From the IMG/VR virus record IMGVR_UViG_3300033183_000491, positions 62,001 to 126,000 of that record: DNA of 64,000 nucleotides. One strand, 5' to 3'. The notes beneath the pieces were generated by a model. That model ran no database searches. It was not told the origin of the DNA and worked only from the letters and a program-made list of their open reading frames with translations. Each line of letters starts with the position of its first letter. Position 1 is the stretch's first letter. Position numbers and translations under genes: made by a program. Below, piece after piece: positions 20,287 through 44,058 of this stretch.

Positions 20287-20310
20287 GTTTTATCTTTCTA
20301 TCCTATAGAC

Positions 20311-23736: not shown

Positions 23737-24020
23737 TACGATATCTCTTTTTTAAGATTAATAATTTCGTTTAAACTAATAGGGATTCTTAAAACAACAC
23801 CTTCAGGAACTTGAAGCCACCACCCTATTCCACTTGCTGCTGCGATAATCCACCAATTATTTGCATCACCATAATACTCGTTTGCATAATGATCTAACCT
23901 TTTACCTTCTTCAGATATTACAAGCTCATACTGGATTAAATCATTTTCTACAGCTTTGTAAACATGAGGTGATATATTAATAAATTTTCCTCTAACTAAT
24001 TTGTATTTATCAATAGCCAT
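23736..24020 (-). CDS. LysM-type baseplate wedge protein (gp53/X-like)
   Basis: RLDHYANEYYGDANNWWIIAAAS....G..LRIP. Confidence 0.85.
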   Translation of the reverse strand: MAIDKYKLVRGKFINISPHVYKAVENDLIQYELVISEEGKRLDHYANEYYGDANNWWIIAAASGIGWWLQVPEGVVLRIPISLNEIINLKKEIS

Positions 24021-26869: not shown

Positions 26870-26874
26870 GACGT

Positions 26875-27141
26875 TTATCCTTTAATAATAGGCTTATCTT
26901 TTAAATATTCATCCAAGTCAACGTCTTTTGAGCTTTTTATGTTTTTGACGTTTTCTTCTGTTACACCTTTTTCAAATTTATTATGTATTGTATCAATATG
27001 TCTATTAAACTTTGCAGACACAATTTCTGATGCTTTCTTTTTATCTATTTCTAAGACTTGAGAATATACTTCAGACATCATCTCTTTAATTTGATCTAGT
27101 TCTTTTAAGTTTAACAATTCTTTTTTAAAATCAATATTCAT
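26875..27141 (-). CDS. hypothetical protein
   Basis: 88-aa ORF filling the gap in the tail operon. Confidence 0.7.
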   Translation of the reverse strand: MNIDFKKELLNLKELDQIKEMMSEVYSQVLEIDKKKASEIVSAKFNRHIDTIHNKFEKGVTEENVKNIKSSKDVDLDEYLKDKPIIKG

Positions 27142-27147
27142 TTATTT

Positions 27148-30100: not shown

Positions 30101-30279
30101 GATTTTGTAAATTCTTTGTACTTGTCTTTAAGTTTATCTGTTAAACTTATTCTGACTTTGAAAGATTCTATAAATTTTTCTTGGATATCTTTTTGTAATT
30201 GACTCTCTTCATTTAGTTCACTTGTAGCTTTTTTAAGAGCATTAATCATTTCTAATTGGATTTGAGCAGAATCTGACAT
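27148..30279 (-). CDS. tape measure protein
   Basis: 1043 aa helical Ala/Leu/Met-rich, FDTFE.AA-like repeat region, C-terminal LNIDG; follows tail chaperones. Confidence 0.82.
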   Translation of the reverse strand: MSDSAQIQLEMINALKKATSELNEESQLQKDIQEKFIESFKVRISLTDKLKDKYKEFTKSIEESENLYKKNSKNIEEAFSVLNKKINENKDSLGKLNTFLLKTSMSFKKLGYQISNEFKDEIAWTKGILGGLFSIPKMAFNVFNKVNRSFTSLFQNPFILGTKLVLGGFISLFTQSMKYATRFVKFMSTLPLKIAGLAAKMGNSLRQDLVMTIGTAVEATKEMFDISEKYGSGAGSAIKSFAEASKSSLLEFRDITSESVILFGKGAQGVANRLQALAKRLSEMGVYADIFGKSLSKIVGGNASQFNFLEKSLRAIGASAEDVAYFSQEAVKSGQHINTVLLKMQMELNDVSKTSGVNQKIISRNFLVMRRNIQDFGHLSSKELLETSESLTKMGLSAQDAAGMFSKLDTFESAAQMAAMLSQSFGMNLDALKLIRAENPQEIFEDLRNAMMSTGRSFEQLNRHEKSLIASTTGLSQMALKSLFDFRDAGMSYEAAMKKMQENTPEAKQLKAFKEMSGSLQEIKNIMQETSFFESFFKGLRTSIVLASGIGDKFIEVSKTMEDFYLTAIGFGKDNKMMSSFKSAFKPIEDTLTKLIGDGTSSKKGLFNKNILTKTVKPFMDNLAKILGESFKDNSNLLKAQNNFSLLLKKTFDFNNIKNNPNNPGSTLFLTGTKLVGQFMKGFAAIGPGIVDTLASGFETLVDFIDGNTKFTNLSENFKTIFSLDDKEAEALELSIQKVLNTVTTKVIPSFFQLGKPIFKFIYDMTTTIVDIAFEAASKAIESTWLGSVLSSTVGIATNSLKKSTVRDYNIAKRFEFTDKDARAMNLEEKLRKGYDSEQAGAIGTLEAIIRNQVKDNEKKDELLKLLYDASESYVNEMLNSYDTKLNNLFNKLEENSIIIRQSSAKDWFGDLFGGQSVVQSGPSGMSVTNLADNDQILAGMGGGPVVEAIRYSGNVASMLARSIMQPSERKSSSTVQQNQQVSERPLVLNIDGQTIATIMVPYLPGAGLTKALKNPSLLKGQEGLNDNATRNPMGGSTEFAGI

Positions 30280-30338
30280 ATCTAAGTACTCACTTTAAAG
30301 GTATGATATAAATATTATCAAAAGAAAAACATAAAGAT

Positions 30339-30567
30339 TTAAAATTGTTTTTTAAATATATTTCTTGTGTTGTTTTGGCTTGGAGTACTTTGATTATTAT
30401 AATGATTTTGTTCTTGTTCTAATGTTTCTTTAAGTTTTCCTATAAACCAAGTTCTTTTCCATATTGGAAGGTTATAAGCATCTTTATAGCTGAAATTTAT
30501 GTGTTTCATAAGAACAAATAATTGTTCAAGAATGACGTCTTTGTTTTCAGGAGTCAGGCCAAAAAAA
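30339..30567 (-). CDS. tail assembly chaperone C-terminal segment (gp51/GT-like), probably reached by frameshift
   Basis: FFGLT...LEQLFVLMKH..FSY.DAYNLPIWKRTWF; overlaps the end of the upstream gene at a T7 run. Confidence 0.7.
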
Positions 30568-31386
30568 CGAGGCTCCGATTGGCAAATCAACCTCACTTTC
30601 TTCATGACAGTGTGAGCATAGCATATGAGATTTCATTTCAACTCCTGGTTCATGTTCGTCCAGGAATCTTCTAAGGGCAAGCGAATCTCTTGCAGGCATA
30701 TTTTGAACAAACAAACTAATTTTATTCTTATCAGAGATATTTTCAATTGAGAGAATAGAACGAGAAAGTCTATCTGTTACAGAACTCTCAACATTAAAGC
30801 CACTCTTTTTCTTTCTTTCATTGATGATCATCATTTCTCTTTCATCATGACCATTTAAGAATTTAACTTTTACGTTTTTCTTTGTGACAGGAAGTTGAAC
30901 TTCAAAAATGTTTTGTCCTATTTCAACAGGGTCAACTTGAAGTCTTTTAATAGGGAGACTTGAAAGATCAAAAGTTGATTTATTAGTCTTAGAACATTCT
31001 GGACATCCAATTTCTAGTGTGTAATCTGAGCCGTATCCTGTAATTCTAAGTGCAATAAGAAGAGCATTTCTATCACCTGAAATTAAATCGTCTGGGTCAA
31101 TAGATTTGTCAATTAAGCAGCTTTTAATAAGTTTTGAAATAACTGTTCCGTTTTTAATATAAGCTCTTGAAGTTAAAATATCTTCTTCTTTAGCTGTCAT
31201 TGGTTTGATTTCAAGAGTTTCTGTTCCAAGTAGGCTATCATTATTATAAATAACACCTCTTGATGGAAGAGGAACTGCTTCTGCTGCAATATCAATACCG
31301 AAGTCGTCAAGCATTACATTGCTTTTTTTAATAGGCCCACGATCATCAATATCAGATGGTTTAATTGGCTCATCTAATTTATTCAT
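30547..31386 (-). CDS. baseplate hub / tail assembly chaperone (T4 gp26-like)
   Basis: LPSRG..Y, MTAKEEDIL, GDRNALL..R...YG, CPEC and CSHC zinc pairs, FFWP end. Confidence 0.85.
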   Translation of the reverse strand: MNKLDEPIKPSDIDDRGPIKKSNVMLDDFGIDIAAEAVPLPSRGVIYNNDSLLGTETLEIKPMTAKEEDILTSRAYIKNGTVISKLIKSCLIDKSIDPDDLISGDRNALLIALRITGYGSDYTLEIGCPECSKTNKSTFDLSSLPIKRLQVDPVEIGQNIFEVQLPVTKKNVKVKFLNGHDEREMMIINERKKKSGFNVESSVTDRLSRSILSIENISDKNKISLFVQNMPARDSLALRRFLDEHEPGVEMKSHMLCSHCHEESEVDLPIGASFFWPDS

Positions 31387-31406: not shown

Positions 31407-34400
31407 CTATCTATTTACATTAATTATACCAATATTATTTTCATCTGTAAAATCATTTACGTTATTTATTAGATTATTAATTTGTATATTTTGGAAGAAA
31501 TCTTCATTTAAATTGTCTCCAAACAAAGAGAATCCAACATTACCTGAAATTGTATGTTCGAGATCTTCTAAGTTTGTTTTGTTTAAATTTGTAATAGGGA
31601 TATCAACAAAGTAATTTTTAATAATGCCTGATTGTCTGTAATTGTCAAAGAAATTTGTTAATTCAATAGAGAGTTGAGCTCTTGTATTTGCTAAAGGATT
31701 TGTCGACGAAGTCATATTAAATAGAACAGTATCATTATTAACAATAGGTTGAGTTATTAATAGATTCTTAAGATTTCTTTTTATATTTAAATAAATTCTG
31801 ACATTGTGAAACAGAGAAAATATATTTTTTCTTTGATTAATTAAAGTATTTGCTGAAAGTGGTTTTATTTTTTTATTAGCAGATAGAGTCCCGATAGGGT
31901 TAACAATATATTCTTTATTTTTTGTTTTTGTTAAGAGATTATCAAAATCATTATTTGAATAAATAAATTTAGAGTTTACAGGATTAGTAAATGTAATTAG
32001 ATTATTGTTATAATTTATACTATCGAGAGGCTGACTAATACTTTGACTTTGAGAAAGAGAATTTATAAATAACATAGAAGAAGGAACTTCTAGATTTAAA
32101 TCATCAACAACAGCTTCACATCTATTAAAAGTACTAATACTAAATCTAGAATTTAAGAATCTTAGTTTTTGCTGATCTAAACTAGTTTCAGTTCCATTAA
32201 TTAAACTAGATTTAACTTCATCTCTTTCATCTAATAAGTCAACTATATTTTTATCTAAATTATTAAAATAATATGTATCTTTAATTAAATTTTCATTCGA
32301 ATCGTACTCTAAAGTATCAAATACATATAAGAAATTTGAATCATCTCTTGATTTAACAACAATATCATCAACAATTTCAGGAGTATTAATACCTGGAATA
32401 TAGAAAACATCACATCTAAAATTATCATTATCTAATGCAATATCTTTAGCAACTTTATATGCATAAGTTGTTTGTCCTACAGTCTGATTAGGTATTTCAC
32501 CATCATATTCTCTTAAACAAGATTCATTAAGCATTTTTCTTTTATATTCATCAAGAATATTAATTCCATCAAACCCGCCATAAGAAAAGAAATCAAAACT
32601 TAAAAATCTCGAAGCAATTGCATCAGCTTCTGTTTCAGAATTAAGAACTTCATTAACATTAATATAATTAAAAGAATCAGGAATATGATCGATATCAGAC
32701 AAATCTTTTCCATCTCTTCTATAGAAAGAATATTGCCACTTATCATTTGTTGTTAATTCATTGGGAAGATATAAAATCTTTTCTAAATGAAAAAATCCAT
32801 TTTGACTATCACTATCAGTATCTTCTAAAGGTGTAATCCAAAACTTTTGATCTCTAAAGTCTTGAAAATATTTCGTATAACTGTGATAAAAATTATATTC
32901 ATCAGAAGAACTTTGCTGAAATGTGTCGAACATAAACTTATATGTATCGTTTTGCCCAACTAGAGAAACATCTTTAATTTCTCCTTTTAATGTTTTATCA
33001 AATTGAACTCCCCAATAACTATTGTCAATGTCATAATTTATTTTATTGTCACTAATTTCATTAATTTTTCTATTTGCGACATATAGTATCGGGTTCTGCA
33101 TTACAGAAACATCGTCTGTTACATCCAGATTACTCTCGTTTATGTTCAAATGAGGATATGGAAAAAATCCACATGGAATCAAAAAAGATTCATTCTGCAT
33201 ATATTCTACATCATCATGTATTTCAACATAAATGTGGTTATTTGTTTTTTTATAGTCACCAACATGAATAACTTCTTTTGTATTCAAATCATAGTATTCA
33301 TATTCTGTCCCAATAATCTTCCCTATATAATTTTCACTTTTAGGATTTAAATCTAAGTCTCTAAAAGACATTAAATTCATAAAAGAGTTATTTTTATAGT
33401 CGTATTTATATACAATTAAATCGAATATTGACCAAGATTCTCTTTGATCTCTTTTAAAAGATTTACCTAGTCTTCTTGGGATTATTCTAAATCTATATTT
33501 GTTTCCTTTTTTACCATCTGAATATGAATGGAATCTAAACAGTTTTTTACATTCATTATGAAAATTCTGTCTAAAACCTTCTTGTCTATATAAAGGTTGG
33601 GAAACGACCCAAGGTGTTTTTGCTTTTTTATAAATACTTTCAAACGATTCAAAATTAACTGTAGGATTGGAACCACTATCAATTTCTTCATTCCAATTAT
33701 TTATACCTACTGTAACAAAATGTCTACTATTATCAGCATCACTTTTAACTGTCTGATTAAATGAACTAATGTTTCTAAATGATGCGTAATTTAAATTTCC
33801 TTTTTCAAGATAATAATCTGGTGATGTATTAAAATAGCTTTCAAAATAATTCTTTTTTAAATATCGGTTTGTTTCATCAGGAAATTCTAAAATAACTTTG
33901 TTTTTATTAAGAACGCCTTGTAAATATATTTTTGGATTTTTTAATGAAGACTCAGTATTACCATATTCAATAGAGTTATTACTACTAACTGAAGATAGTT
34001 TGTTGTATAAATCTTCTTGTTTAAAAGTGTCAAGTTCATCTGATTGCAGTTTAAACTTTGTTCCTTTTGCTGCAAAAACAATGTCAGTAATTAAACCTAG
34101 TTTTGTAATTGAAGAATCACCTGTAATTTGCTCAATATAGTCTCTATAAGGAGAAACATATCCGTCTAAATCTATATTTTCATAATATGATCCGAAAAAA
34201 GTAGTTTTTCCTTTACTTCCACCAGAAACAGCAAAAGAATTATCACCTTTGATTCCAGATGTTATACTTCCTTTTAAAACGTCATCGCCAACAATAAAAC
34301 CAGCATGTTCATATTTGTTTTGAGAGTTTAAGCCGTTTCCATCACCAATACCAAGAACTCTTGTATAAGTTAATTGATTACCATTATTTGACAACCAGAT

Positions 34401-34646
34401 GTTTGAAGTTAAAGGACCATATTGATCTTTTTGATATTCAAAGTCACCAAATATGTTTTCCCACGTATTTAAAGTTGCTTCAGACTTTCCAAAAGACAAT
34501 ATTTGTTGTGGAACAAAAGCAGGACCCATATTAGCTGTACCAACAACTGAAAGTGTTTCTTCAGTTAATGATACTGTTACCTCTTCTTTAAAAGAGTTAG
34601 GTGTTACAATATGACCACTTATTTGTGAATTGTTGACATTTGACAT
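31407..34646 (-). CDS. divergent tail sheath paralogue 3
   Basis: VGTA..GPAFVP, TRVLG.G, AKTPW, FRFH...DG, GGFDGIN, NVR motifs shared with the other two sheaths. Confidence 0.8.
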   Translation of the reverse strand: MSNVNNSQISGHIVTPNSFKEEVTVSLTEETLSVVGTANMGPAFVPQQILSFGKSEATLNTWENIFGDFEYQKDQYGPLTSNIWLSNNGNQLTYTRVLGIGDGNGLNSQNKYEHAGFIVGDDVLKGSITSGIKGDNSFAVSGGSKGKTTFFGSYYENIDLDGYVSPYRDYIEQITGDSSITKLGLITDIVFAAKGTKFKLQSDELDTFKQEDLYNKLSSVSSNNSIEYGNTESSLKNPKIYLQGVLNKNKVILEFPDETNRYLKKNYFESYFNTSPDYYLEKGNLNYASFRNISSFNQTVKSDADNSRHFVTVGINNWNEEIDSGSNPTVNFESFESIYKKAKTPWVVSQPLYRQEGFRQNFHNECKKLFRFHSYSDGKKGNKYRFRIIPRRLGKSFKRDQRESWSIFDLIVYKYDYKNNSFMNLMSFRDLDLNPKSENYIGKIIGTEYEYYDLNTKEVIHVGDYKKTNNHIYVEIHDDVEYMQNESFLIPCGFFPYPHLNINESNLDVTDDVSVMQNPILYVANRKINEISDNKINYDIDNSYWGVQFDKTLKGEIKDVSLVGQNDTYKFMFDTFQQSSSDEYNFYHSYTKYFQDFRDQKFWITPLEDTDSDSQNGFFHLEKILYLPNELTTNDKWQYSFYRRDGKDLSDIDHIPDSFNYINVNEVLNSETEADAIASRFLSFDFFSYGGFDGINILDEYKRKMLNESCLREYDGEIPNQTVGQTTYAYKVAKDIALDNDNFRCDVFYIPGINTPEIVDDIVVKSRDDSNFLYVFDTLEYDSNENLIKDTYYFNNLDKNIVDLLDERDEVKSSLINGTETSLDQQKLRFLNSRFSISTFNRCEAVVDDLNLEVPSSMLFINSLSQSQSISQPLDSINYNNNLITFTNPVNSKFIYSNNDFDNLLTKTKNKEYIVNPIGTLSANKKIKPLSANTLINQRKNIFSLFHNVRIYLNIKRNLKNLLITQPIVNNDTVLFNMTSSTNPLANTRAQLSIELTNFFDNYRQSGIIKNYFVDIPITNLNKTNLEDLEHTISGNVGFSLFGDNLNEDFFQNIQINNLINNVNDFTDENNIGIINVNR

Positions 34647-34709
34647 TTAACATCCTGTTTTTAACTTTATTATATAACTATTAATGTAGGTTAAAAAACA
34701 GGATGTTAA
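34647..34709 (-). promoter_or_regulatory. ~19-bp inverted repeat covering the sheath-3 RBS, with an AT motif in the loop
   Basis: TTAACATCCTGTTTTTAAC (34647-34665) / GTTAAAAAACAGGATGTTAA (34690-34709). Confidence 0.75.
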
Positions 34710-34725
34710 TATTTAATGATTTAAA

Positions 34726-35214
34726 TTAGTATTGAAGTACGCAGTTATCAAATCTGATTGTTAAAGAAATGTCTGCTGGTGCTTCATCATCATATGAAAG
34801 ATCACTAAAGTTTGCATTAGTTAAGAAAGCTCCTTTAATATCCCAAAGTTCAACAACTGTTCCAACAGGATCAAGCATCTTAAGTTGACAATCTCTTTTA
34901 TAGAAATCTGCATAACCAGCTCTACCACTAACAGATTCATAGTGTGTACGAATCCATTCCATAACTTGTTGCGCTCCACTTGGCGCAATAGGATCGTGAA
35001 GAGTAACATTCATTTGTTCGAATGTCATCTTACCTGCAACATATCTTTTTGCATTGATAAAGTTAATTTCTTGCTCACCAATTGAAAATGAAGGTCGACT
35101 AGCAGACTTAAGGATAAAGGCATCAATACCCTCAATTGCGAAGACCCATCTGTTCTTTCTTTTTGGCTCAAACTTATTCGGAATCATTTCCGTGACTGAA
35201 AGCGTCTCTGCCAT
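34726..35214 (-). CDS. tail tube protein (gp19-like)
   Basis: FEPKR.NRW, RP, DPIAPS..Q.VMEW, YKRD..L..LDP.G..VE.W...GAF. Confidence 0.92.
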   Translation of the reverse strand: MAETLSVTEMIPNKFEPKRKNRWVFAIEGIDAFILKSASRPSFSIGEQEINFINAKRYVAGKMTFEQMNVTLHDPIAPSGAQQVMEWIRTHYESVSGRAGYADFYKRDCQLKMLDPVGTVVELWDIKGAFLTNANFSDLSYDDEAPADISLTIRFDNCVLQY

Positions 35215-35249
35215 TTTATTATCTCCTAAAATTCTTTATATTATATATA

Positions 35250-38200
35250 TTAGTCTATTGAATTAGTTACAACGAAATCAAGTGAAATAAACTCTACAGA
35301 TTTGGTAGGTTGCAAATAAACTTTACCACGAATTGTATTGTTTTCAATATCATTTTGAGTTGTTGTTGATGTATCAATTTGAACTTTATAACGTTCTACA
35401 CCTTGACGTGCCTGAACTTCTGACATGATCGGCTCAACGAGTGAACTAAATCTATTAAGAGTTGAAGCTCTATTCGGCTCGAATAAGAGTGTATTAGCAA
35501 CTGCCTTAACTCTACGACGAATGTTAATCAAAAGTCTACGAACATTAATTCGATCAAGAGCTGATTGATTTTGTAACAAAGTCTTTTGTCCAAATGCATA
35601 AACCTCGTTTGTACGTCCTGATGGAACATAAATTGGATTAATGTCTGCATCATAAAGATCATTTAACAAATCTCGATTCATTTGAACCTTTGCATTACTT
35701 GCATTTAAACGTCCACGAGTTAAACCAGCTGGAGCAAACCAAGGATCAGCTAATGTATCATTTTGACTCATAACACCAAGTATACATACTGACGGAGGAA
35801 CCTGAATTGGTGTGTTATTTGACGATCTTCTTGAAATAACATCTGGGAAATATGCAGCTGCAAAAGATGTATCCAATCCACGATTTTCAAATGTTGTAAT
35901 TGTTTGACCAACGTGAGGCTTAATATCTGATGATGTAATAACTGCAGAATTCTTATCAGATTCTTGAATATCCATAACCAACATTGCATCAAATCTGCTT
36001 TCGCAAGCTGTAATTGCATAATCTGTTACTAAAGGTTCACGAATACCAGGAATTGCTAACAACTGAATCTCTGTTGCACTCTTATCTGAAAGAACGTCAA
36101 TTGCTCTCTTGTAAGATTCAACAGTTGGGCCAGTAAACTTGTTTGATCCTACCACTTCCTCGTTAGCTTCACGATGAGCAGCAACTGTACTTAAAGCAGC
36201 TTTTTCCTTGTTAAAGATATTAAGACCATCAAATCCACCTTGCATTAAACAACGGAACTTAAGAAACTTAACATTACCACCCTTAGCTGCAGTTGAAATG
36301 TCAAATGCAGAAAGATTAGAATTGTCACTCGAACCAGATCTTTCATAAACAGCTGATGCCCAATCTGACCCATCCCAGAAAATATTCTCAAGAGAGAAAG
36401 ATTCACTAGACAATTTAGAGAAAGAATAAGTTCCCATATCAGGATAAAATTTTGTCCAAGATCTAATACTTGGATTAAGTCTAATCTCACCTAACTCTTT
36501 ATGAAGACCACCATTTTCTTTCTTTGCAAATTTAACGCCCCACGCCAAATCAGAAGATGGTGATACAGATACACCAGATTGTCTCGTTAATGTCTTTACG
36601 AAAGGTAAAGGTAAAACCTCAAGATTCTCAAGAGTGTTTACTAGAAGTAAACGTGATTCACCTGATCCATTTGTTCCTGATTCATCAAATAATCCTGTAT
36701 AACCTGTGTTAAGTGTTACATACTCTGAGAATCCACAAGGAAGAGTCACATAATCCAAGTCACCAGACATAAGCTCTTCAGACATTTCAACCCAAACATA
36801 TTTGTTTCGAAGTTCAAAATCTCCATCTTCAACGAGCTTTCCTTTCTTGAAATCATAATAAACATTCTTGTTACCAATAACTCTACCAATAAAGTTTCTA
36901 TGGTCTGGGTCAAGTGTTAAATTCTTCCAAGACACAATAGACTCACCCTTGACAGGATCACTATCAAAACTCTCTAATGATAAACTAAATGTTGCCCACT
37001 CAGACGCTGTTGAACCTAGTCTTAAATCTGAAATAAGGATTCTAAATCTATCGTTTGCTATTGCACCATCATCTTGTGCATGTAGTCTAAATAGTTTCTT
37101 TGTTTGTCCACCAAACTTTTGAGACATAATCCAAGGAGATTTTGCTGTTCTGAATCTTGTGTCAAAGCCTTCAAAATTAGGACTGTCAGCTGTTTCAGTA
37201 TTTCTTGATCCTTGTGACGGTAAACAGAAAGCAGCAGTTTCTGAACTAGCTGCGGTATTTGTAGACGTATATACACCTGTTACATCAATTACTGAAACGT
37301 CTGGATCAACGTCCCAATGAGCATATAAATAATGTCCACATTCTTCAATCTTTTCTGGGTCTGTGTTTAAAACTTTAGCAAAGTAATTAACACTTTCAGG
37401 ATCAAATGAACAAGTTAAAACTGCTGGATGATCAGTGTTACTAAACCCATTTAATAAAACTGTAAAAGAATTATTATCTACTTTACCTAATTCGTAACCA
37501 ATTAAATCAGAAGCCTCAGTGCCACCAAAGTTTCTTAAAGTACCTTCGCTAGTTACAGATTTTCTTGCATCTGCATCTGTAGTAGAGACAGATGTGTATG
37601 TTCCATCTGTAACGTCTAATGTAGCTTTAACTCCTTGAGGAGTCATAAGTAGACCTCGAATTACAGGAATAGCTGATCCACTTCCTCCAGTTAAGTTTAA
37701 TTGTTGAATTCCAAAACTACTATCAATCCTTGTTCCATTAAATGAAGCCTTTATTGGAGAACCTTTTATTTTTAAAATAATACTATCACTAAAGAAATTA
37801 CCAACATCTGAATTAGTCTTTGCTTCAAGACTAAGATACATTAGATAAATATTACTTTCATCCTGAACTGCGTCGCTTATGATACCAAATGGTCTAATAT
37901 TTTGATCAGTTTGACTATTTCCAATAGTATCTCTTAAAACATCTTGAATTCTATTAACTGTTTCAACTTGATTTGTATTGTCGATTTCAATTTGATAATA
38001 TCCACTTACTAGAGTACCATTAACTGTTCCATCTGTATACTCAACAAATTTGTATCTTACTGTAGTATCTGTTGCAGTATTAAGAGATTTAAAATCAAAA
38101 GAAAATTCATTCCCGATTAAAGTATCACTAATATCAAATTCCAAGAAAAAAGTACTATTTTCAGTAATATTAGACCCAGTAGTATCAACTGTTGAGGATG

Positions 38201-39623
38201 TATTATCAATATCACTTACATTAACAAAGTTTGTAATCGCGCCTTTTAAAGAACTTGTAATAGTTAATGTTCCATTATTATTATTTACAAATGTATACGT
38301 AGGATCTCCTTGACCATCTAATTGGTTTGCTTCAGCAGCAGCTCGTCCAAAAGTAATAGCTTCAGCTATTCTTCCCGCTATATTTGTATTATTACCTAAT
38401 TGGTTTGAAATACCAATAACAACATTTCCTTGAGTATTGTCTCTAGCAGCTGCTGAATCTTGTGTTGTATCAATTCTAATTGTTAAATCATTTCCTAAAA
38501 TATCTGTTATAACAATAGTATCATCATTTAATGGGTTGCCAGAAATTGTAAGAGTAACAATTTCTGCAACTGCAGGTGTGTCGTAAATAGGACCAAGTGC
38601 AAGCTGAGTTTCTAAATCTGTTCCACTTGAAGAACTATTCCCTAATGATGAAAGGGTAATCGACCCTTCTGTATCTGTATTTAAGAAATATTTAACACTT
38701 GTATTTGTAGATTCTCCTGTTCCAACGTGACTAATTTCAATAAAGTTACTAACTAAATCTTTTGTAATAACATTTAAATAGTTTGATGATAAAATTTTAC
38801 TTGAGGGAAAAGCTATTCCTAATTCGCTTTGTCCACTAAATGCTTTTTCTAATTGACTTAAAAATCCGTCAATATCTAAACCATTAATACCGACGGATAT
38901 CTCATGTGGATCTGACTCTGTCCCAGCAGAATCAGTCAAATCTTCAGGGGTGATAGTTGATGATCCTGTTAAGAAAATAAATTTAAGCCATTTAATATCA
39001 CTTTCACCTACAGCTTTAATTAAAATAAAATCATCGTTTGAAGGTAACTCATCTCCAAGAGTAATTTTTAATCTAGAAGAAACATTCGAACTTTGAAGTC
39101 CTGCATCTTTTAAGAATTCACTTCCAGCAGCATCTTTCATGAAACATCCTAAGAAGTGTGTTCTTCCGACATCTTTTGCAGCAGTTTTTGAAGCTGCAGC
39201 ATTAGGTCCTGATTCATAAGCTGCATGTTGATTATCTGTTAAATCTGTTCCATCGTATGAAACTGAGTCACCAACGATAAAACCAGCACCTTGTGTTTTT
39301 TTATTTGAATCTAATGTACCGTCGCCATCACCAACGCCAAGAACTCGAACGTAAGCTCCAGCTTGAGCATTTCTCATCCATTCATTAATAGCAAGAGGAC
39401 CAAAGAGATTGGCGTTGCTATCTTGGCTAACTTCTGAAAGAGATCCGAAAATGTCTCCGAATTGTTGTGTATTTGCGAATGTTTTTGGTACGAAAGCAGG
39501 GCCACGTTTAGCAGGCCCTACAACTGCAGCAGGAACACCTTGAGGTAGAACTTCTTGGTCCCTAACTTGTGATAAATCTATTTCTCTTAGAGTAACTCTT
39601 GCTGAGCCTTGATTATCGGCCAT
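35250..39623 (-). CDS. tail sheath protein 2 with a large internal insertion
   Basis: EIDLS, GPAFVP, PWFAPAG..RG, INPI, FGQKTL, SALDRINVRRL, LFEPN, PTKSVEFI. Confidence 0.93.
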   Translation of the reverse strand: MADNQGSARVTLREIDLSQVRDQEVLPQGVPAAVVGPAKRGPAFVPKTFANTQQFGDIFGSLSEVSQDSNANLFGPLAINEWMRNAQAGAYVRVLGVGDGDGTLDSNKKTQGAGFIVGDSVSYDGTDLTDNQHAAYESGPNAAASKTAAKDVGRTHFLGCFMKDAAGSEFLKDAGLQSSNVSSRLKITLGDELPSNDDFILIKAVGESDIKWLKFIFLTGSSTITPEDLTDSAGTESDPHEISVGINGLDIDGFLSQLEKAFSGQSELGIAFPSSKILSSNYLNVITKDLVSNFIEISHVGTGESTNTSVKYFLNTDTEGSITLSSLGNSSSSGTDLETQLALGPIYDTPAVAEIVTLTISGNPLNDDTIVITDILGNDLTIRIDTTQDSAAARDNTQGNVVIGISNQLGNNTNIAGRIAEAITFGRAAAEANQLDGQGDPTYTFVNNNNGTLTITSSLKGAITNFVNVSDIDNTSSTVDTTGSNITENSTFFLEFDISDTLIGNEFSFDFKSLNTATDTTVRYKFVEYTDGTVNGTLVSGYYQIEIDNTNQVETVNRIQDVLRDTIGNSQTDQNIRPFGIISDAVQDESNIYLMYLSLEAKTNSDVGNFFSDSIILKIKGSPIKASFNGTRIDSSFGIQQLNLTGGSGSAIPVIRGLLMTPQGVKATLDVTDGTYTSVSTTDADARKSVTSEGTLRNFGGTEASDLIGYELGKVDNNSFTVLLNGFSNTDHPAVLTCSFDPESVNYFAKVLNTDPEKIEECGHYLYAHWDVDPDVSVIDVTGVYTSTNTAASSETAAFCLPSQGSRNTETADSPNFEGFDTRFRTAKSPWIMSQKFGGQTKKLFRLHAQDDGAIANDRFRILISDLRLGSTASEWATFSLSLESFDSDPVKGESIVSWKNLTLDPDHRNFIGRVIGNKNVYYDFKKGKLVEDGDFELRNKYVWVEMSEELMSGDLDYVTLPCGFSEYVTLNTGYTGLFDESGTNGSGESRLLLVNTLENLEVLPLPFVKTLTRQSGVSVSPSSDLAWGVKFAKKENGGLHKELGEIRLNPSIRSWTKFYPDMGTYSFSKLSSESFSLENIFWDGSDWASAVYERSGSSDNSNLSAFDISTAAKGGNVKFLKFRCLMQGGFDGLNIFNKEKAALSTVAAHREANEEVVGSNKFTGPTVESYKRAIDVLSDKSATEIQLLAIPGIREPLVTDYAITACESRFDAMLVMDIQESDKNSAVITSSDIKPHVGQTITTFENRGLDTSFAAAYFPDVISRRSSNNTPIQVPPSVCILGVMSQNDTLADPWFAPAGLTRGRLNASNAKVQMNRDLLNDLYDADINPIYVPSGRTNEVYAFGQKTLLQNQSALDRINVRRLLINIRRRVKAVANTLLFEPNRASTLNRFSSLVEPIMSEVQARQGVERYKVQIDTSTTTQNDIENNTIRGKVYLQPTKSVEFISLDFVVTNSID

Positions 39624-39665
39624 ATCTATAGTCTCCTGTTATTCTTTAAATCTTTATATTATATA

Positions 39666-42600
39666 TTAGGGAAATTCAACACCTGCGTTTGTAATAACAA
39701 AATCAATTGCAATAAATTCAACAGCACGTGTTGGGACGATAACAATTTTACCATTTAATCGATTATTGTCAACATCTTCAGATGTATTATTTGTATCATC
39801 CATGATAACCCTGAAGTCTTCAATCCCTTGATTAACTTGAATTGAAGATAATTGTGAATTTGAGCTTTGAACGAACCTTGCTCTCGTTTCACTGTTATTT
39901 TGTTCGAATAAAAGCCCTTGAGCAATTAATTCGATTCTTCTCTTAACTTCTAGGACCAAACGACGTACGTTAACGCGATCAAGAGCTGTTCTTGCTAGTT
40001 GTGAAGTCTTTTGTCCAAAGATAACAAATTGTTTGTTCGGGAAGTTTGCAATAGGATTAATACGTGCTTCGTAAAGAGTATCACGATCTTCTGCATTTAA
40101 TCTAACATCGATTGCCTGAATTGTTTCGAGTGTTCCTCTTGTAAATCCTGCAGGAGCAAACCAAGGTTGTGCAACATCATCAGTCTTAGCTAATGCACCA
40201 AGAGCAATAATTGATGGTGGAACCTTAATCATTCTTCTACTTGCTAAAGCTGCTGTTTCATCATCGCTAAAGTCTAAGATCTTAACGTCAGGGAAATAAG
40301 ATGCTGTATAAGATGAATTAACTTCTCTACGATCAAATGCTCCAGCTGTTTCATCAACATCAGGTCTACTTGAAGAAAGTCCTTTTTCATTCACAAAGAC
40401 TCTAAATCCATCTGTATCGAATTGTTGGATGTCCATTAGGTAAAGAGATTTTCCAAATTCTTCGCTCTTTAATTTAACTCTATCAGTAATGAATGGATCT
40501 CTAATTCCTGGAAGAAGAAGAACATTATGATTAACAACCATTTCGTCAGTCATTAAATTAACAGCATTCATGTAAGATGCAACAACATTGTTTTCATCTT
40601 CAGCACCTTGCATAGCAGCAGCTGTTGTAAGCGCAAGACCACTGTCAAATCCAGATGAACTTGCTTTACCTTGATCAGCTAAATCAGAACCTGCTCCTTT
40701 TTGTGTCAATTCAATCGATGCAGCGCGATCTGTCATGTAATATGAGTCGCTGTCTAAGATATTAAGTCCATCAAATCCACCAAAGAAAGGAGCTGTAAAC
40801 TTAGCTGCAACGCTATACTTATTAAACTTAGTTACATCCTCTGCTAAAAGTTTTGCTAATGACATTCTAACAGATTGAACTTCAACTGATGTATCTTCAC
40901 CTGAAAGAGCGTCTTTTGAATCTGTAACTGTGAAATTAATTGTATGATTAGAAGAATCATATAGTTTTGATCCAACATCTGCATTTCTTATATAAACAGC
41001 ATCTTTAAATAGTTCTGAAACTGAACCCTTGAGAGCATCAACTCTAAGGTCAGCAGAACTTCCATCGTCTGCAAGAGGAGTTTTAAAACAAACTTTTGCT
41101 AAACTGAATTTGTTATTGTTATGAGAATCTGCCTTTGATCTTGACCAAACATCAGTATCTGCACTTAAAAACTTTGTATAATTCTCTAGGAGTTGATTAA
41201 ACTCTGTACTGTGATTAGGATTATCAATGTCTTTAATTCTTGTTGACATTAAACCCCAGTGAAGACTTAAATCAACAGATTCAGAAGGTGATGCTTCACC
41301 TGTAAACGTTTGATTATATGAAAGACCTCCTGTTTTAATACTTCCTTTTGTAATCTTAAATCTACTTGGTAAAGGAGGCATAACAGATTTATTTAGATTT
41401 GATGCTGGGTTACTATCTGTAAATGTAGTCCAAAGTGCTGTCGAAGAGTCTTTACCCTCTGCGTTTAATAAAAGAGCAGGAACTCCACGATAACCGAATG
41501 GAAGAGCTTTTTGTGGAGCTTCTCCATTTAAGACATCATCACTTACAACAACTCTAACTCTTGTTGAATTATTAGAGAATGATCCTTCACGAATTAATCT
41601 TCTTTCAGATTCTTGTGCTTCAAAATTATAATAAATCTTTTGATCACCAATAACATTACCAATAAATGATTCTGAATTGGGATCTAATGAACAATTTGTA
41701 AATGTTTCATAAACAATTTGAGCTTCATCTGTATCTCTTAAATCTCTTACCGAAACTGTGAATGTTCCATATTCGCTTGTTGGATCATTACTTGCTCTTA
41801 GATTCGAAATAGAAATCTTATATTTATTACTTGCATATGCACCATCATCTAATGATTCAAAGTGGAATAAATCGTATTCTTTATCACCAAAAGGTTGAGA
41901 GATAAACATTGGCGTTTCTGGAGTTGTAAACTTATTTTCAAAGTTAGCATACTTACTTAAATAATTTACTCCGCTAACATCATCATTTCCTCTTAAGAGA
42001 GCAACAGCTTGTCCGACGTTTGAAGCAACTTCTACATCAACAGGAAAATGTGCATATAATAAGACTTTATGTTCATCAAAAGCTAAAGGATCTGTATTTA
42101 AAACTTTTGAGATATAGCTTGAACTAGATGGATCTAATGAAATGTCTCTAGTATAAATTGAACCTGCATCGTTTCTAATATCTAAAGTAAATAATCCAGA
42201 TGTTTCATCAGAAGTTTCGACGTCAGCGTTTGTTCCTACTTTTAAGTGAACATCTTTATGAACAAAAATCATTGCTCTAACTAATTCGACAATACCATCT
42301 CCAGCATTACCTAAACCATCTGTTAAATCATTGTCCATGTCTGTTGTATGAGAATTATTGTCGTTAAAGTTACCTAAAGCAAGATGTTCTGCGTTATCTA
42401 ATTTATGCTTTGCAGCAAGAAAAAAGACGCTGCCTTTTCCTGATGCATCGTCTGAACTAAGTTTGAATCCTGCATTGACTGAAGGTGATCCTATAGAGTA
42501 TCCACTTCCAAGAGTTCTACAAAAAGTAAGAGCTTTACCGTTGTTTCTAAAAAATTCTGTTGCTGCGTGTCCGCCAAGCATGCGTCTGTCAGGTGCTCCG

Positions 42601-42773
42601 AAGATTCGAGTGTATTCTTCAATTGATGAAACAGTAGTTGGTACAAATGCTGGACCTCTTTCAGAAGGACCAATAACACCGACAGGTGTTGCTGTGTTTC
42701 TAAAAATAGGTCTACTGATTATTTCAATTTCACGCTCAAAAAAACCTGGAGACTTAAATGTCTGCTCTGCCAT
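39666..42773 (-). CDS. tail sheath protein 1
   Basis: SPGFFEREI, GPAFVP, PWFAPAG, INPI, GQKT, ALDRVNVRRL, PTRAVEFI. Confidence 0.94.
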   Translation of the reverse strand: MAEQTFKSPGFFEREIEIISRPIFRNTATPVGVIGPSERGPAFVPTTVSSIEEYTRIFGAPDRRMLGGHAATEFFRNNGKALTFCRTLGSGYSIGSPSVNAGFKLSSDDASGKGSVFFLAAKHKLDNAEHLALGNFNDNNSHTTDMDNDLTDGLGNAGDGIVELVRAMIFVHKDVHLKVGTNADVETSDETSGLFTLDIRNDAGSIYTRDISLDPSSSSYISKVLNTDPLAFDEHKVLLYAHFPVDVEVASNVGQAVALLRGNDDVSGVNYLSKYANFENKFTTPETPMFISQPFGDKEYDLFHFESLDDGAYASNKYKISISNLRASNDPTSEYGTFTVSVRDLRDTDEAQIVYETFTNCSLDPNSESFIGNVIGDQKIYYNFEAQESERRLIREGSFSNNSTRVRVVVSDDVLNGEAPQKALPFGYRGVPALLLNAEGKDSSTALWTTFTDSNPASNLNKSVMPPLPSRFKITKGSIKTGGLSYNQTFTGEASPSESVDLSLHWGLMSTRIKDIDNPNHSTEFNQLLENYTKFLSADTDVWSRSKADSHNNNKFSLAKVCFKTPLADDGSSADLRVDALKGSVSELFKDAVYIRNADVGSKLYDSSNHTINFTVTDSKDALSGEDTSVEVQSVRMSLAKLLAEDVTKFNKYSVAAKFTAPFFGGFDGLNILDSDSYYMTDRAASIELTQKGAGSDLADQGKASSSGFDSGLALTTAAAMQGAEDENNVVASYMNAVNLMTDEMVVNHNVLLLPGIRDPFITDRVKLKSEEFGKSLYLMDIQQFDTDGFRVFVNEKGLSSSRPDVDETAGAFDRREVNSSYTASYFPDVKILDFSDDETAALASRRMIKVPPSIIALGALAKTDDVAQPWFAPAGFTRGTLETIQAIDVRLNAEDRDTLYEARINPIANFPNKQFVIFGQKTSQLARTALDRVNVRRLVLEVKRRIELIAQGLLFEQNNSETRARFVQSSNSQLSSIQVNQGIEDFRVIMDDTNNTSEDVDNNRLNGKIVIVPTRAVEFIAIDFVITNAGVEFP

Positions 42774-42828: not shown

Positions 42829-44058
42829 CTAATTATCTTTAATCGAGATATTAAAAATAGATTCTGCATATTTTTGATCATAAATTGTTTCTCCAGAAGA
42901 ACTTGCGACACCTTTAATTTCTATAATGTTGCCTTTACTGTCCTTATGGATAACTTTTCTTTGTTTTTTAGAATTTGAGCTTCTTTCTCCTACAAAATCA
43001 TAAACTTCTAAATTAGATTCACCAACTGCAAAAGCTGAAGATTTATCTGTATTATGTAGGTTATCTAAAGAGTCTAAAGCGTTGACTCCAATTCTTTGTG
43101 CAACAGGTTGTAAGTCTTCGTCTAGAATTGGATCAAGAATTCTAGAGTTTGGATCGTTGCTTTGAATACCACCTAGATGAGGATCTAGTTGTGAAGGATT
43201 ATCAAGAATTTCAAATGAAACTTGAGGAGCACTTGTTAAAGATTTAATTCCAACTTTTCCACCAGTTATATTAGGTGCAAGAATATATCCTGTTGCTCCA
43301 ACTGTCATACTATATTTAATATATCGTTCTGCATCAGTGTAATCTGCATAATTAGTATCTTGAGAAAAAGAACTTTCGACAAATGCTGGGAACCAATAGC
43401 CTTTCTTACTTTCTATACGAAATTGTTGTCCAGGATTAAGCGTGTAAGCACTCATGATTGATTCTAATATATTGTTCATTTGTTGAGTAAAAGATGACCA
43501 GATTGTAATCTCGTAACTTGCTCCAAAATATTTAACTGGTGGTATTTCTATTGTCTCATAGATATTGTTATTTATTTGTGGTTTAAGGCTATAAGAAGAT
43601 TTTTGTGAATCTGTATTGACTGAAGTGTGATTTAAACTTTTGAAACCTTCAAAATTATTAAGTTGACGATATTCTGTATTATTTTCAGCGATTCGTCTAA
43701 TAAATGTTTCTGGAAGCATTTCATTATTAGCAATACCTTTTTGAGGTTTATTTTCAAGATTTGTTCTTGTAATAGATATTAAAGGTAAGATTAAAGCACC
43801 AGATTTATCTGTAATAGGTTGTTTTCTTCTTAAGATTGCAAATCTTTCACCTGTTGCAAATATAACAGGAATTTTTTTAACTTCACCTTGAATCTCAAAA
43901 AATAAAGGAATTTGTTTGTTAAAAAGATTAAAAATAGCAAAGTCTAAATCTTCAATACCACATGAAGGAATAACATAATCATATGCTTTATTTGTATCTT
44001 CATATCCGCTTATAATTGAAGAGTTATCTTCTGTTGTTTTATCATATCTTGTTGACAT
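42829..44058 (-). CDS. tail terminator / sheath stabiliser (gp15-like)
   Basis: IPVIFA.GERF, LPLISI.R, YEITIW....QMN; between neck and sheath genes. Confidence 0.72.
   Translation of the reverse strand: MSTRYDKTTEDNSSIISGYEDTNKAYDYVIPSCGIEDLDFAIFNLFNKQIPLFFEIQGEVKKIPVIFATGERFAILRRKQPITDKSGALILPLISITRTNLENKPQKGIANNEMLPETFIRRIAENNTEYRQLNNFEGFKSLNHTSVNTDSQKSSYSLKPQINNNIYETIEIPPVKYFGASYEITIWSSFTQQMNNILESIMSAYTLNPGQQFRIESKKGYWFPAFVESSFSQDTNYADYTDAERYIKYSMTVGATGYILAPNITGGKVGIKSLTSAPQVSFEILDNPSQLDPHLGGIQSNDPNSRILDPILDEDLQPVAQRIGVNALDSLDNLHNTDKSSAFAVGESNLEVYDFVGERSSNSKKQRKVIHKDSKGNIIEIKGVASSSGETIYDQKYAESIFNISIKDN

What the first reader, a model, noticed from the sequence alone, without database searches (positions are those of the whole stretch)
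31407..42773. Three full-length tail-sheath paralogues around a single tube gene
Seen: 1035, 1457 and 1079 aa proteins share colinear motifs (GPAFVP, R.LG.G, TP/SPW, F.F....DG...N.Y/F, GGFDG.N, NVR). Two keep the canonical C-terminal WFAPAG/GQKT/RRL core. The third has lost WFAPAG and GQKT and is more AT-rich. T4-like myophages normally encode one sheath. Inference: a heteropolymeric or position-specialised sheath, as in multi-sheath contractile injection systems (Afp/PVC), with paralogue 3 as a low-copy initiator or terminator ring.
Basis: partly seen in the sequence, partly recalled or inferred. Interest (0 to 1): 0.72.

Follow-up and report, generated by a model that had tools for sequence, protein, structure and literature searches.

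The report
Three tail-sheath paralogues, one specialised
An uncultured 240-kb marine T4-like phage, and at least 65 related loci, encode two ordinary tail-sheath proteins plus a third, strongly remodelled sheath-fold protein that is conserved, weakly expressed and grouped with the baseplate genes, so a phage tail sheath can be built from specialised subunits as in bacterial injection machines.

Summary
Three sheath-family ORFs flank one tube gene: S1 (39666-42773, 1035 aa), S2 (35250-39623, 1457 aa) and S3 (31407-34646, 1079 aa). S1 and S2 are canonical sheaths. S3 has no Pfam, PHROG, NCBIfam or PDB-sequence match, yet aligns colinearly with sheaths (hhalign E 1e-82) and its confident AF2 model matches solved sheaths at Z up to 28.6.

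S3 is not decaying. About 70 orthologue clusters exist, 57 loci carry complete ORFs, and dN/dS is 0.10-0.20. The order gp15-S1-S2-tube-S3-hub holds in about 65 loci. Sister phages have two sheaths and more distant ones have one, in the same frame.

S3 branches with the S2 lineage. It has lost PWFAPAG and GQKT, and its conservation pattern is inverted: the handshake arms and C-terminal core, most conserved in S1 and S2, are least conserved in S3.

S3 lies behind an expression boundary, a covarying hairpin that buries its weak Shine-Dalgarno sequence (a terminator in distant relatives). It also behaves as an exchangeable divergence island.

Best reading, inferred and not shown: S1 and S2 form the bulk sheath, and S3 is a low-copy specialised ring, probably at the baseplate end like Pvc4. 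This is a new variant of a known kind.

The parts
39666..42773 (-). S1, a canonical tail sheath paralogue (1035 aa) with N-terminal arm MAEQTFKSPGFFEREIE
   Evidence: Pfam PF04984 and PF17482 above cut-off, PHROG 23 at 4e-52. Groups with the first sheath (Sa) of two-sheath phages at 100/100 support. N-arm, C-core and C-arm identity among orthologues is 0.87-0.95.
35250..39623 (-). S2, a canonical tail sheath paralogue (1457 aa) with a distinct, near-invariant N-terminal arm (GSARVTLREIDLSQV) and a large variable insertion
   Evidence: PF17482 above cut-off, PHROG 23 at 8e-45. 30% identical to S1. Groups with Sb of two-sheath phages. The C-terminal domain has 81% mean column identity over 35 orthologues.
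37413..39287 (-). S2-specific insertion (about aa 113-737), variable in length and sequence
   Evidence: Absent from S1 and S3 in the alignment; S2 orthologues range from 1169 to 1590 aa. It is a divergence island between close genomes. No Pfam match; only weak sheath beta-sandwich leads from the Atlas search.
34726..35214 (-). Tail tube protein (gp19-like, 162 aa)
   Evidence: PHROG 4542 at 2e-28; PF06841 at 2.9e-5, below the cut-off. It is the only such hit in the genome. 77-96% identical among orthologues; dN/dS 0-0.06.
34647..34709 (-). Conserved RNA hairpin in the tube-S3 spacer. 5' arm 34694-34709; loop containing the TATATAATA box at 34668-34676; 3' arm 34647-34662, which contains the S3 SD (AGGA) and abuts the ATG.
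   Evidence: MFE -19.2 kcal/mol, z -4.84. In 19 loci it forms a 14-bp helix with 95.4% of cells paired, against 40-52% in slid controls. Seven pairs show double-sided changes, reached by 0 of 500 shuffles.
31407..34646 (-). S3, a divergent sheath-fold paralogue (1079 aa) and founder of an unannotated family
   Evidence: No Pfam, PHROG, NCBIfam or PDB-sequence hit. hhalign against sheaths gives prob 100, E 1e-82, colinear over 28-1041. AF2 pLDDT 87.7, pTM 0.88. Foldseek and VIA top hits are all sheaths, Z up to 28.6. About 70 orthologue clusters; dN/dS 0.10-0.20.
30547..31386 (-). Baseplate hub-like protein (PF12322 T4_baseplate), 20 nt downstream of S3
   Evidence: PF12322 at 4e-18, PHROG 150 'baseplate hub'. 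It always follows S3; in two- and one-sheath relatives it follows the tube. No terminator-like element at S3>hub (0/29).
42829..44058 (-). gp15-like tail sheath stabiliser/terminator, upstream of S1
   Evidence: PF16724 at 1.3e-6, above the cut-off. Conserved in position in one-, two- and three-sheath relatives.
39657..39665 (-). TATATAATA promoter-like box upstream of S2, followed by a strong AGGAG SD
   Evidence: The box is about 10-fold enriched upstream of same-strand ORF starts (10 of 29 hits against 3.3% by chance).
35239..35247 (-). TATATAATA promoter-like box upstream of the tube gene, followed by a strong AGGAG SD

Best explanation
The locus encodes a three-member sheath gene family in a deep-branching T4-like jumbo phage.

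Shown: S1 and S2 are ancient tandem duplicates that both keep every canonical sheath feature. Each has its own near-invariant handshake arms and a strong ribosome-binding site. S3 is a later offshoot of the S2 lineage. It keeps the complete sheath fold but has lost the PWFAPAG and GQKT core motifs. It is under purifying selection, but the constraint has shifted away from the lattice-forming arms and C-terminal core. S3 sits on the baseplate-hub side of an expression boundary: a hairpin that buries its weak Shine-Dalgarno sequence, or a terminator in distant relatives.

Inferred: S1 and S2 co-polymerise as the bulk contractile sheath in an ordered pattern, and the S2 insertion forms an outward decoration. 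S3 is made in small amounts together with baseplate-hub proteins. It forms a single specialised ring at the baseplate end of the sheath, between the gp25-type initiator or tube-initiator level and the first S1/S2 disc, in the way Pvc4 does in PVC particles. S3 is translated mainly from transcripts that start at the promoter-like box inside the hairpin loop. Read-through RNA from the abundant S1-S2-tube messages keeps the SD paired, as for T4 genes e, soc and 49.
For: - **Homology and fold:**
- **Maintenance:** about 70 orthologue clusters, 57 complete ORFs with dN/dS 0.10-0.20 where dS is unsaturated, and invariant residues along the whole length.
- **Conserved synteny:** gp15-S1-S2-tube-S3-hub in about 65 loci.
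- **Origin:** Sa+S1 100/100 and (S3,(Sb,S2)) 96/94. AU tests do not reject S3+S2 as a clade (p 0.13) and marginally reject S3 with S1 (p 0.03). The S3 profile hits S2-like genes best, and complete two-sheath genomes have no third copy.
- **Inverted constraint:** N-arm, C-core and C-arm identity is 0.95/0.87/0.89 in S1 and 0.88/0.86/0.90 in S2, against 0.37/0.29/0.27 in S3.
- **Expression:** median SD duplex dG is -4.0 for S3 against -7.0 to -7.3 for S1, S2, tube and hub. RBS accessibility is 0.31 for S3 against 0.38 for S1 and 0.49-0.60 for S2, tube and hub (52 contexts). The hairpin covaries.
- **Boundary:** terminators after the tube in 17 of 25 two-sheath spacers, and none at S1>S2, S2>tube or S3>hub in three-sheath loci. 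The S3-hub gap is about 19 nt.
- **Composition:** S3 resembles low-copy gp13/gp15, not S1, S2, tube or capsid.
- **Precedents:** PVC (Pvc4 initiator ring; Pvc2/Pvc3 alternating, with a knob on Pvc3; PMC12546770), the PaBG two-component sheath (PMC7412058) and T4 SD-sequestering hairpins with internal late promoters (PMC3014915).
Against: - There is no direct evidence that any of the three proteins is in virions, of their ratio, or of where S3 sits.
- The complex prediction (gp25-like plus the three C-terminal domains) gave no answer.
- The hub protein is presumably also low-copy yet has a strong SD, so SD strength alone does not measure copy number.
- The gp25-like protein is better conserved (47-79% identity) than the S3 arms that would have to dock on it.
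- S3's most variable part is the domain that faces the tube in ordinary sheaths, which a simple initiator-ring model does not obviously predict.
- The bimodal, cassette-like divergence of S3 suggests an additional or different role under diversifying pressure.
- The statistics on spacers are not phylogenetically independent.
- The metatranscriptome data were uninformative.
Confidence: 0.5

Rival explanations
1. S3 is a sheath-derived protein that has left the sheath. It would be an exposed, exchangeable tail or baseplate accessory, such as a fibre-docking or host-surface-contacting collar, or an adaptor to a variable partner. Its diversity would be driven by host range or by host defence, not by a structural initiator role.
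For: S3, like the S2 insertion, is a sharply bounded divergence island between otherwise 82-97% identical genomes. The pattern is bimodal, which suggests allele replacement. dS of S3 is far above its neighbours in some pairs. Constraint on the lattice elements is lost. S3 evolves fastest of all genes in the block.
Against: S3 keeps the full sheath core fold, including the basic 'NVR' helix and the INPI and LF motifs. The most variable part is the inner C-terminal domain, not the outer domains. dN/dS of 0.1-0.2 shows no pervasive positive selection. This reading overlaps the best explanation rather than excluding it.
Confidence: 0.22
2. All three proteins are bulk lattice subunits, giving a repeating three-component sheath in which S3 is present in amounts comparable with S1 and S2.
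For: All three share the fold and are colinear. All three genes carry the same TATATAATA box 21-33 nt upstream of the start.
Against: S3 lacks PWFAPAG and GQKT and has poorly conserved arms and core. It has a weak, sequestered SD. It lies behind the terminator or hairpin boundary and has the composition of low-copy proteins. Two-sheath sister phages build tails without it.
Confidence: 0.08
3. S3 forms the neck-proximal, last ring of the sheath, contacting the gp15 terminator.
For: A specialised end ring could in principle sit at either end, and no tool result here bears directly on location.
Against: The gene order runs neck (gp13, gp14-like, gp15), then S1-S2, tube, S3, hub, which places S3 with the baseplate genes. 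S3 is transcriptionally joined to the hub gene and not to gp15. gp15 is equally present in one- and two-sheath relatives that lack S3. In PVC the specialised ring is at the baseplate.
Confidence: 0.08
4. S3 is a non-structural sheath mimic, for example a decoy against a host defence that senses sheath or tube proteins, or it is a decaying duplicate.
For: Fast evolution, cassette-like exchange and loss of polymerisation motifs.
Against: Decay is excluded: ORFs are intact in 57 loci, dN/dS is 0.1-0.2, and the predicted fold is confident. A 1079-aa decoy that keeps the whole multi-domain architecture, sits inside the tail module and is co-transcribed with the hub gene is unparsimonious.
Confidence: 0.05

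Closest known systems
PVC/Afp extracellular contractile injection systems (Pvc2, Pvc3, Pvc4; Afp2, Afp3, Afp4)
   Same: Both have three sheath-fold paralogues in one locus. One paralogue (Pvc4) forms a single 'sheath initiator' ring at the baseplate. The other two build the trunk in alternating layers, and one of them (Pvc3) carries an extra outward knob (PMC12546770). S3, S1 and S2 with its insertion mirror this division.
   Different: The origins are independent. The phage paralogues arose by duplication inside a T4-like phage lineage. The proteins are three times larger. The gene order differs, with S3 lying after the tube gene. The positions of the phage proteins have not been determined.
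Pseudomonas jumbo phage PaBG two-component tail sheath
   Same: It is a phage with two sheath proteins that arose by duplication, and both were found in virions (PMC7412058; Kurochkina 2018 as cited there).
   Different: It belongs to another phage lineage. It has two proteins of about 547 aa with 38% identity, and no divergent third paralogue. Its two sheath genes are numbered far apart (gp76 and gp213).
T4 gp18 sheath with gp25 initiator and gp15 terminator
   Same: S1 and S2 are gp18 homologues. The genome also encodes gp15-like, gp19-like and gp25-like proteins and a T4-type baseplate hub protein.
   Different: T4 uses one sheath protein for all discs. Here there are three, and the third lacks the conserved C-terminal motifs.
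T4 translational control of genes e, soc, 49 and I-TevI by SD-sequestering hairpins with an internal late promoter
   Same: The hairpin holds the SD in its 3' arm. A promoter-like box (TATATAATA, or TATAAATA in some relatives) lies in the loop or the 5' strand, so only locally initiated RNA would expose the SD (PMC3014915).
   Different: Here it would separate a structural gene from upstream structural messages, giving dosage control rather than early-versus-late timing. Promoter activity is untested.

Membership tests
Contractile tail sheath proteins (gp18 / Pfam Phage_sheath_1 and Phage_sheath_1C) | Sequence match to the Pfam C-terminal sheath domain PF17482 above the gathering score | tested here: not met
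   For S3 there is no Pfam, PHROG, NCBIfam or PDB-sequence hit. S1 (33.7 bits) and S2 (31.5 bits) pass the 26.9-bit cut-off.
Contractile tail sheath proteins (gp18 / Pfam Phage_sheath_1 and Phage_sheath_1C) | Sheath core fold (N-terminal plus C-terminal core domains) | tested here: met
   The S3 AF2 model (pLDDT 87.7) matches KP1, pyocin R2, T4, PVC and AFP sheaths at Z 24-28.6 over residues about 26-1042. hhalign against the S1/Sa/Sb profile gives prob 100, E 1e-82.
Contractile tail sheath proteins (gp18 / Pfam Phage_sheath_1 and Phage_sheath_1C) | Conserved C-terminal core motifs of this lineage (PWFAPAG, FGQKT, NVRRL) | tested here: not met
   S3 has lost PWFAPAG and GQKT and keeps only NVR, INPI-like N916 and LF975-976. 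S1 and S2 keep all of them as invariant columns.
Contractile tail sheath proteins (gp18 / Pfam Phage_sheath_1 and Phage_sheath_1C) | Polymerises around the tube in virions and contracts | not testable with these tools
   This is an uncultured phage. The complex prediction gave no answer.
Multi-sheath organisation of the PVC/Afp type (works-like comparison) | Three sheath-fold paralogues encoded together with the tube | tested here: met
Multi-sheath organisation of the PVC/Afp type (works-like comparison) | One paralogue restricted to a single baseplate-proximal ring | not testable with these tools
   Only indirect support: S3 is co-located and apparently co-expressed with the hub gene, has a weak and sequestered SD, and has lost lattice constraint.
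Multi-sheath organisation of the PVC/Afp type (works-like comparison) | Common descent with Pvc2-4 / Afp2-4 paralogues | tested here: not met
   S1, S2 and S3 are each other's closest relatives. They arose within a series of one-, two- and three-sheath T4-like phages in one syntenic frame.
T4-type SD-sequestering hairpin with internal late promoter | Conserved helix that includes the SD or start region | tested here: met
   A 14-bp helix, 95.4% paired in 19 loci, with 7 covarying pairs. z -4.84 in the window. In the 8 spacers of the second design the CCT:AGG pairing is in the MFE structure every time, but those stems are weak.
T4-type SD-sequestering hairpin with internal late promoter | Functional promoter inside the hairpin, with differential translation of long and short transcripts | not testable with these tools
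   A TATATAATA box lies in the loop 21 nt from the ATG, and the box is enriched upstream of genes. The only RNA run was uninformative.
gp25-type sheath initiator (GPW_gp25) | PF04965 domain | tested here: not met
   S3 has none. A separate 162-aa gp25-like gene lies at G000:C1:160288-160557, so S3 adds to the canonical initiator rather than replacing it.

The most novel reading that the evidence does not exclude
S3 defines a previously unannotated family of sheath-derived proteins. It would form a dedicated, low-copy interface ring in a phage tail and also be an exchangeable, hypervariable cassette. A part of the contraction machinery would then be swapped between genomes like a host-range module, perhaps tuning the triggering of contraction or evading a host defence that senses sheath proteins. 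Together with an obligately two-component (S1/S2) bulk sheath, this would show that phage sheaths have repeatedly evolved the division of labour so far known only from eCIS particles.
Probability: 0.2. Interest if true: 0.8.

Novelty: new variant of a known kind. Interest (0 to 1): 0.62.

Why it matters
Contractile phage tails are usually described as homopolymers of one sheath protein. This locus, and the graded series of one-, two- and three-sheath relatives around it, shows that environmental T4-like phages commonly duplicate the sheath gene. In one widespread marine jumbo-phage clade a third copy has been remodelled into something new while keeping the fold.

The result gives a function-level annotation to about 70 clusters of 'hypothetical' 1,100-aa proteins. 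It offers a natural system for asking how heteromeric sheaths are ordered and how contraction is initiated. It also provides a phage counterpart to the Pvc4/Afp4 initiator ring that arose independently.

The covarying SD-sequestering hairpin is a clean, testable example of dosage insulation between adjacent structural genes.

Tried and rejected
- **Neutral decay of S3:** rejected (dN/dS 0.10-0.20; intact in 57 loci).
- **Complex prediction:** the gp25-like protein with the C-terminal domains of S3, S1 and S2 gave 'no answer' (score 0.00, controls not run). It is not used as evidence.
- **AF2 model of S1:** too poor to use (pLDDT 45.6) because the alignment had only 10 sequences. No direct S1-S3 structural comparison was therefore possible.
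- **Metatranscriptome:** one run, kept as contigs, covered only the conserved tube gene, mostly from relatives, plus one low-depth contig bridging tube, spacer and S3. It is uninformative on relative expression.
- **T4 late promoter TATAAATA:** no copy lies on the coding strand in the intergenic spacers upstream of S1, S2, tube or S3 in the window. The sigma-70 and terminator scan found no more sites than shuffles did.
- **Uninformative scans:** NCBIfam on 10 neighbours, Pfam on the S2 insertion and the ESM Atlas on the S2 insertion.
- **RNAalifold on the second spacer design:** Single-sequence folds show the expected pairing but with weak stems.
- **First locus search:** The search for related loci with S3 as a single protein found nothing. 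The family alignment was needed.
- **ORFs downstream of the hub:** the small and large ORFs show no paralogy to one another.

Full report
**What is there.** The window is bases 62001-126000 of a 239,550-bp viral contig with direct terminal repeats. It is a deep-branching T4-like phage with a gp23 capsid protein and a gp20 portal, as well as UvsX, a gp41-type helicase and a gp32-type SSB. It is remote from cultured phages: the best capsid matches are a 484-kb uncultured phage at 40% and Rhodothermus phage RM378 at 34%. On the minus strand lie, in order:
- a gp13-like gene and a 218-aa ORF;
- gp15-like, 42829-44058;
- S1, 39666-42773 (1035 aa);
- S2, 35250-39623 (1457 aa);
- the tube gene, 34726-35214;
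- S3, 31407-34646 (1079 aa);
- a T4_baseplate (PF12322) hub-like gene, 30547-31386.

S1 and S2 hit the sheath families. S3 hits nothing in Pfam, PHROGs, NCBIfam or PDB sequences.

BLASTP gives S1-S2 5e-85, S2-S3 6e-41 and S1-S3 2e-17. A profile of 49 S3 orthologues aligns colinearly with a sheath profile (S3 28-1041 against S1 27-1014) at probability 100 and E 1e-82. PWFAPAGF and FGQKT are replaced in S3, while INPI (N916), the NVR helix (R950) and LF (975-976) are kept. The AF2 model of S3 is confident (pLDDT 87.7, pTM 0.88). Its best PDB matches are all contractile sheaths: T4 gp18, Klebsiella KP1, phiKZ, pyocin R2, AFP and PVC. Z reaches 28.6, and the alignments span residues about 26-1042. 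The genome holds exactly these three sheath-family genes.

**S3 is maintained, not decaying.** About 70 clusters of full-length orthologues exist, at 64% down to 27% identity. Fifty-seven fetched loci carry complete S3 ORFs. In pairs where dS is unsaturated (0.05-0.56), dN/dS is 0.10-0.20. For comparison, the tube is at 0-0.06, the hub at 0.007-0.09, and S1 and S2 at 0.02-0.47. S3 is nevertheless the fastest-evolving gene of the block: 57% identity to its L008 orthologue, where S1 is 78%, S2 64% and the tube 96%.

**Distribution and origin.** The order gp15-S1-S2-tube-S3-hub is found in every one of about 65 loci long enough to show it. A sister group has two tandem sheaths, then the tube, then the hub: about 44 loci in a scan that reached its 600-match limit, including complete genomes of 305 and 369 kb. 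More distant relatives, about 28 loci, have a single sheath in the same frame, as does Microcystis phage Mel-JY01.

In a 25-sequence tree, S1 groups with the first sheath of two-sheath phages (100/100). S3 groups with the S2/Sb lineage (96/94) on a long stem of 2.03 substitutions per site, and its internal topology mirrors those of S1 and S2. AU tests do not reject S3 as sister to the S2 of three-sheath phages (p 0.13) and marginally reject an origin from S1 (p 0.03). Complete two-sheath genomes contain no third copy. So the S1/S2 duplication is old and widespread, and S3 is a later, clade-specific addition inserted between the tube and the hub.

**Shift of constraint.** Among six genomes, the most conserved parts of S1 and S2 are the N-terminal arm (0.95 and 0.88 mean pairwise identity), the C-terminal core (0.87 and 0.86) and the C-terminal arm (0.89 and 0.90). 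From what is known of sheath lattices, these are the elements that make the handshake mesh and contact the tube. In S3 the same parts are the least conserved (0.37, 0.29, 0.27), and the best-conserved parts are residues 31-114 and 368-506. S1 and S2 have different N-terminal arms, MAEQTFKSPGFFEREIE and GSARVTLREIDLSQV, each nearly invariant within its own family. That is what one would expect if each arm has its own fixed docking site in an ordered two-component lattice, but this is an inference. S2 also carries a variable insertion of about 470-620 aa, and S2 orthologues range from 1169 to 1590 aa.

**Expression signals.** S1, S2 and the tube are each preceded by an AT-rich box and a strong AGGAG SD. 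The tube-S3 spacer is the longest in the block and holds a long hairpin. Its 3' arm contains the weaker S3 SD and abuts the ATG: 5' arm 34694-34709, 3' arm 34647-34662, MFE -19.2 kcal/mol, z -4.84. In 19 related loci the helix is 95.4% paired, against 40-52% in slid controls, and 7 of 14 pairs show compensatory changes, a level reached by 0 of 500 shuffles.

Over 52 non-redundant contexts the S3 SD is weaker, with median duplex dG of -4.0 against -7.0 to -7.3 kcal/mol. Its RBS is also less accessible, at 0.31 against 0.38 for S1 and 0.49-0.60 for S2, tube and hub. These contexts are related, so the p-values overstate independence.

The loop carries TATATAATA 21 nt before the ATG. The same box lies 24 and 33 nt before the tube and S2 starts, and it is about 10-fold enriched upstream of genes in this genome. 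Distant relatives instead have a stem plus T-run terminator after the tube, then an AT-rich box. Others have CCTAYTTATAAATA, containing the T4 late-promoter octamer, pairing with AATAGG at the SD. In two-sheath phages 17 of 25 tube>hub spacers carry a terminator. In three-sheath loci none was found at S1>S2, S2>tube or S3>hub. S3 therefore belongs to the baseplate-hub side of an old expression boundary, about 19 nt from the hub gene.

This layout matches the documented T4 mechanism for genes e, soc, 49 and I-TevI. There, read-through RNA hides the SD and transcripts from a late promoter within the structure are translated (PMC3014915). That it works this way here is an inference.

S3's AT-richness is mostly a matter of amino-acid composition: GC12 is 0.33 against 0.44 in S1 and S2. 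Its GC3 (0.14) resembles gp13 and gp15 rather than the tube (0.26) or the capsid protein (0.30).

**Cassette behaviour.** Between otherwise close genomes, S3 is either as similar as its flanks or drops to about 71-77% nucleotide identity while the flanks stay at 82-96%. The edges of the drop are sharp, at the tube/S3 and S3/hub junctions. The S2 insertion behaves in the same way. dS of S3 can be several-fold that of its neighbours, for example 1.40 against 0.22-0.66 for L008 versus L021. This points to allele replacement by recombination and remains unexplained by a purely structural role.

**Interpretation.** The best-supported reading has three parts:
- S1 and S2 together form the bulk sheath.
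- S3 is a low-copy, specialised sheath-derived ring associated with the baseplate end.
- S3's dosage is kept low by transcriptional and translational insulation from the S1-S2-tube messages.

The closest known analogue is the PVC particle. There Pvc4 is a sheath-fold 'sheath initiator' ring, and Pvc2 alternates with Pvc3, which carries an extra knob (PMC12546770). The resemblance is convergent, because the phage paralogues arose within their own lineage. [quoted passage not shown] I found no description of a three-sheath phage or of the S3 family, although the library does not cover all journals.

**Limits.** Nothing here shows virion presence, stoichiometry or position. The single complex prediction gave no answer, the S1 model was too poor to use, and the RNA data were uninformative. 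The genome also keeps a canonical gp25-like initiator, so S3 would be an extra layer and not a replacement.

Noticed in passing
window 37413-39287 (-), S2 residues about 113-737: S2 carries a large insertion that varies in length (S2 orthologues range from 1169 to 1590 aa). It is a sharply bounded divergence island between close genomes. It has no Pfam match, and the Atlas search gave only weak sheath beta-sandwich leads.
   Followed up: partly
L008 vs L021, L006 vs L029/L028, L053 vs L060 (S3 genes and flanks): S3 divergence is bimodal. It either matches its flanks or drops to about 71-77% nucleotide identity while the tube and hub stay at 82-96%, and dS is also elevated. This suggests allele replacement by recombination.
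   Followed up: partly
window 34668-34676, 35239-35247, 39657-39665 (-) and 7 other sites in G000: The box TATATAATA lies 0-80 nt upstream of a same-strand ORF start in 10 of its 29 occurrences, against 3.3% expected by chance. It is a candidate promoter element of this phage.
   Followed up: partly
window 52963-54360 (-): A 465-aa ORF beside the gp23 capsid gene has weak, below-cut-off Pfam hits to a NUMOD3 motif and a Mom-family domain. It may be a mobile endonuclease-like or DNA-modification gene.
   Followed up: no
window 16114-17163 (-) and 7243-8418 (-): A 349-aa ORF matches only the C-terminal part of a DNA polymerase family. A 391-aa ORF matches only an internal part of the ribonucleotide reductase large subunit. 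Both may be split genes.
   Followed up: no
G000:C1 about 206.8-218.6 kb (outside the window): A run of small plus-strand ORFs has GC3 of 0.29-0.63, against a genome median of 0.17. This is a compositionally foreign island.
   Followed up: no
L144, L168, L169: Distant single-sheath relatives have two adjacent tube-like ORFs between the sheath and the hub genes, so tube duplication occurs in place of sheath duplication.
   Followed up: no
window 17200-30605 (-); same layout in L003-L009: Downstream of the hub gene, small ORFs (82-94 aa) alternate with very large ones (about 850-1250 aa and more). The layout is conserved in all loci, but there are no family matches and no detectable paralogy among them.
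   Followed up: partly
L054:10493-11616: S3 is split into two overlapping ORFs near a contig end. It is the only interrupted S3 seen, and may be a frameshift or an assembly error.
   Followed up: no
window 34510-34776: One near-identical contig (2 differences in 267 nt) from a marine metatranscriptome spans the tube 3' end, the hairpin spacer and the S3 5' end. Read-through RNA, or carried-over DNA, across the hairpin therefore exists.
   Followed up: partly
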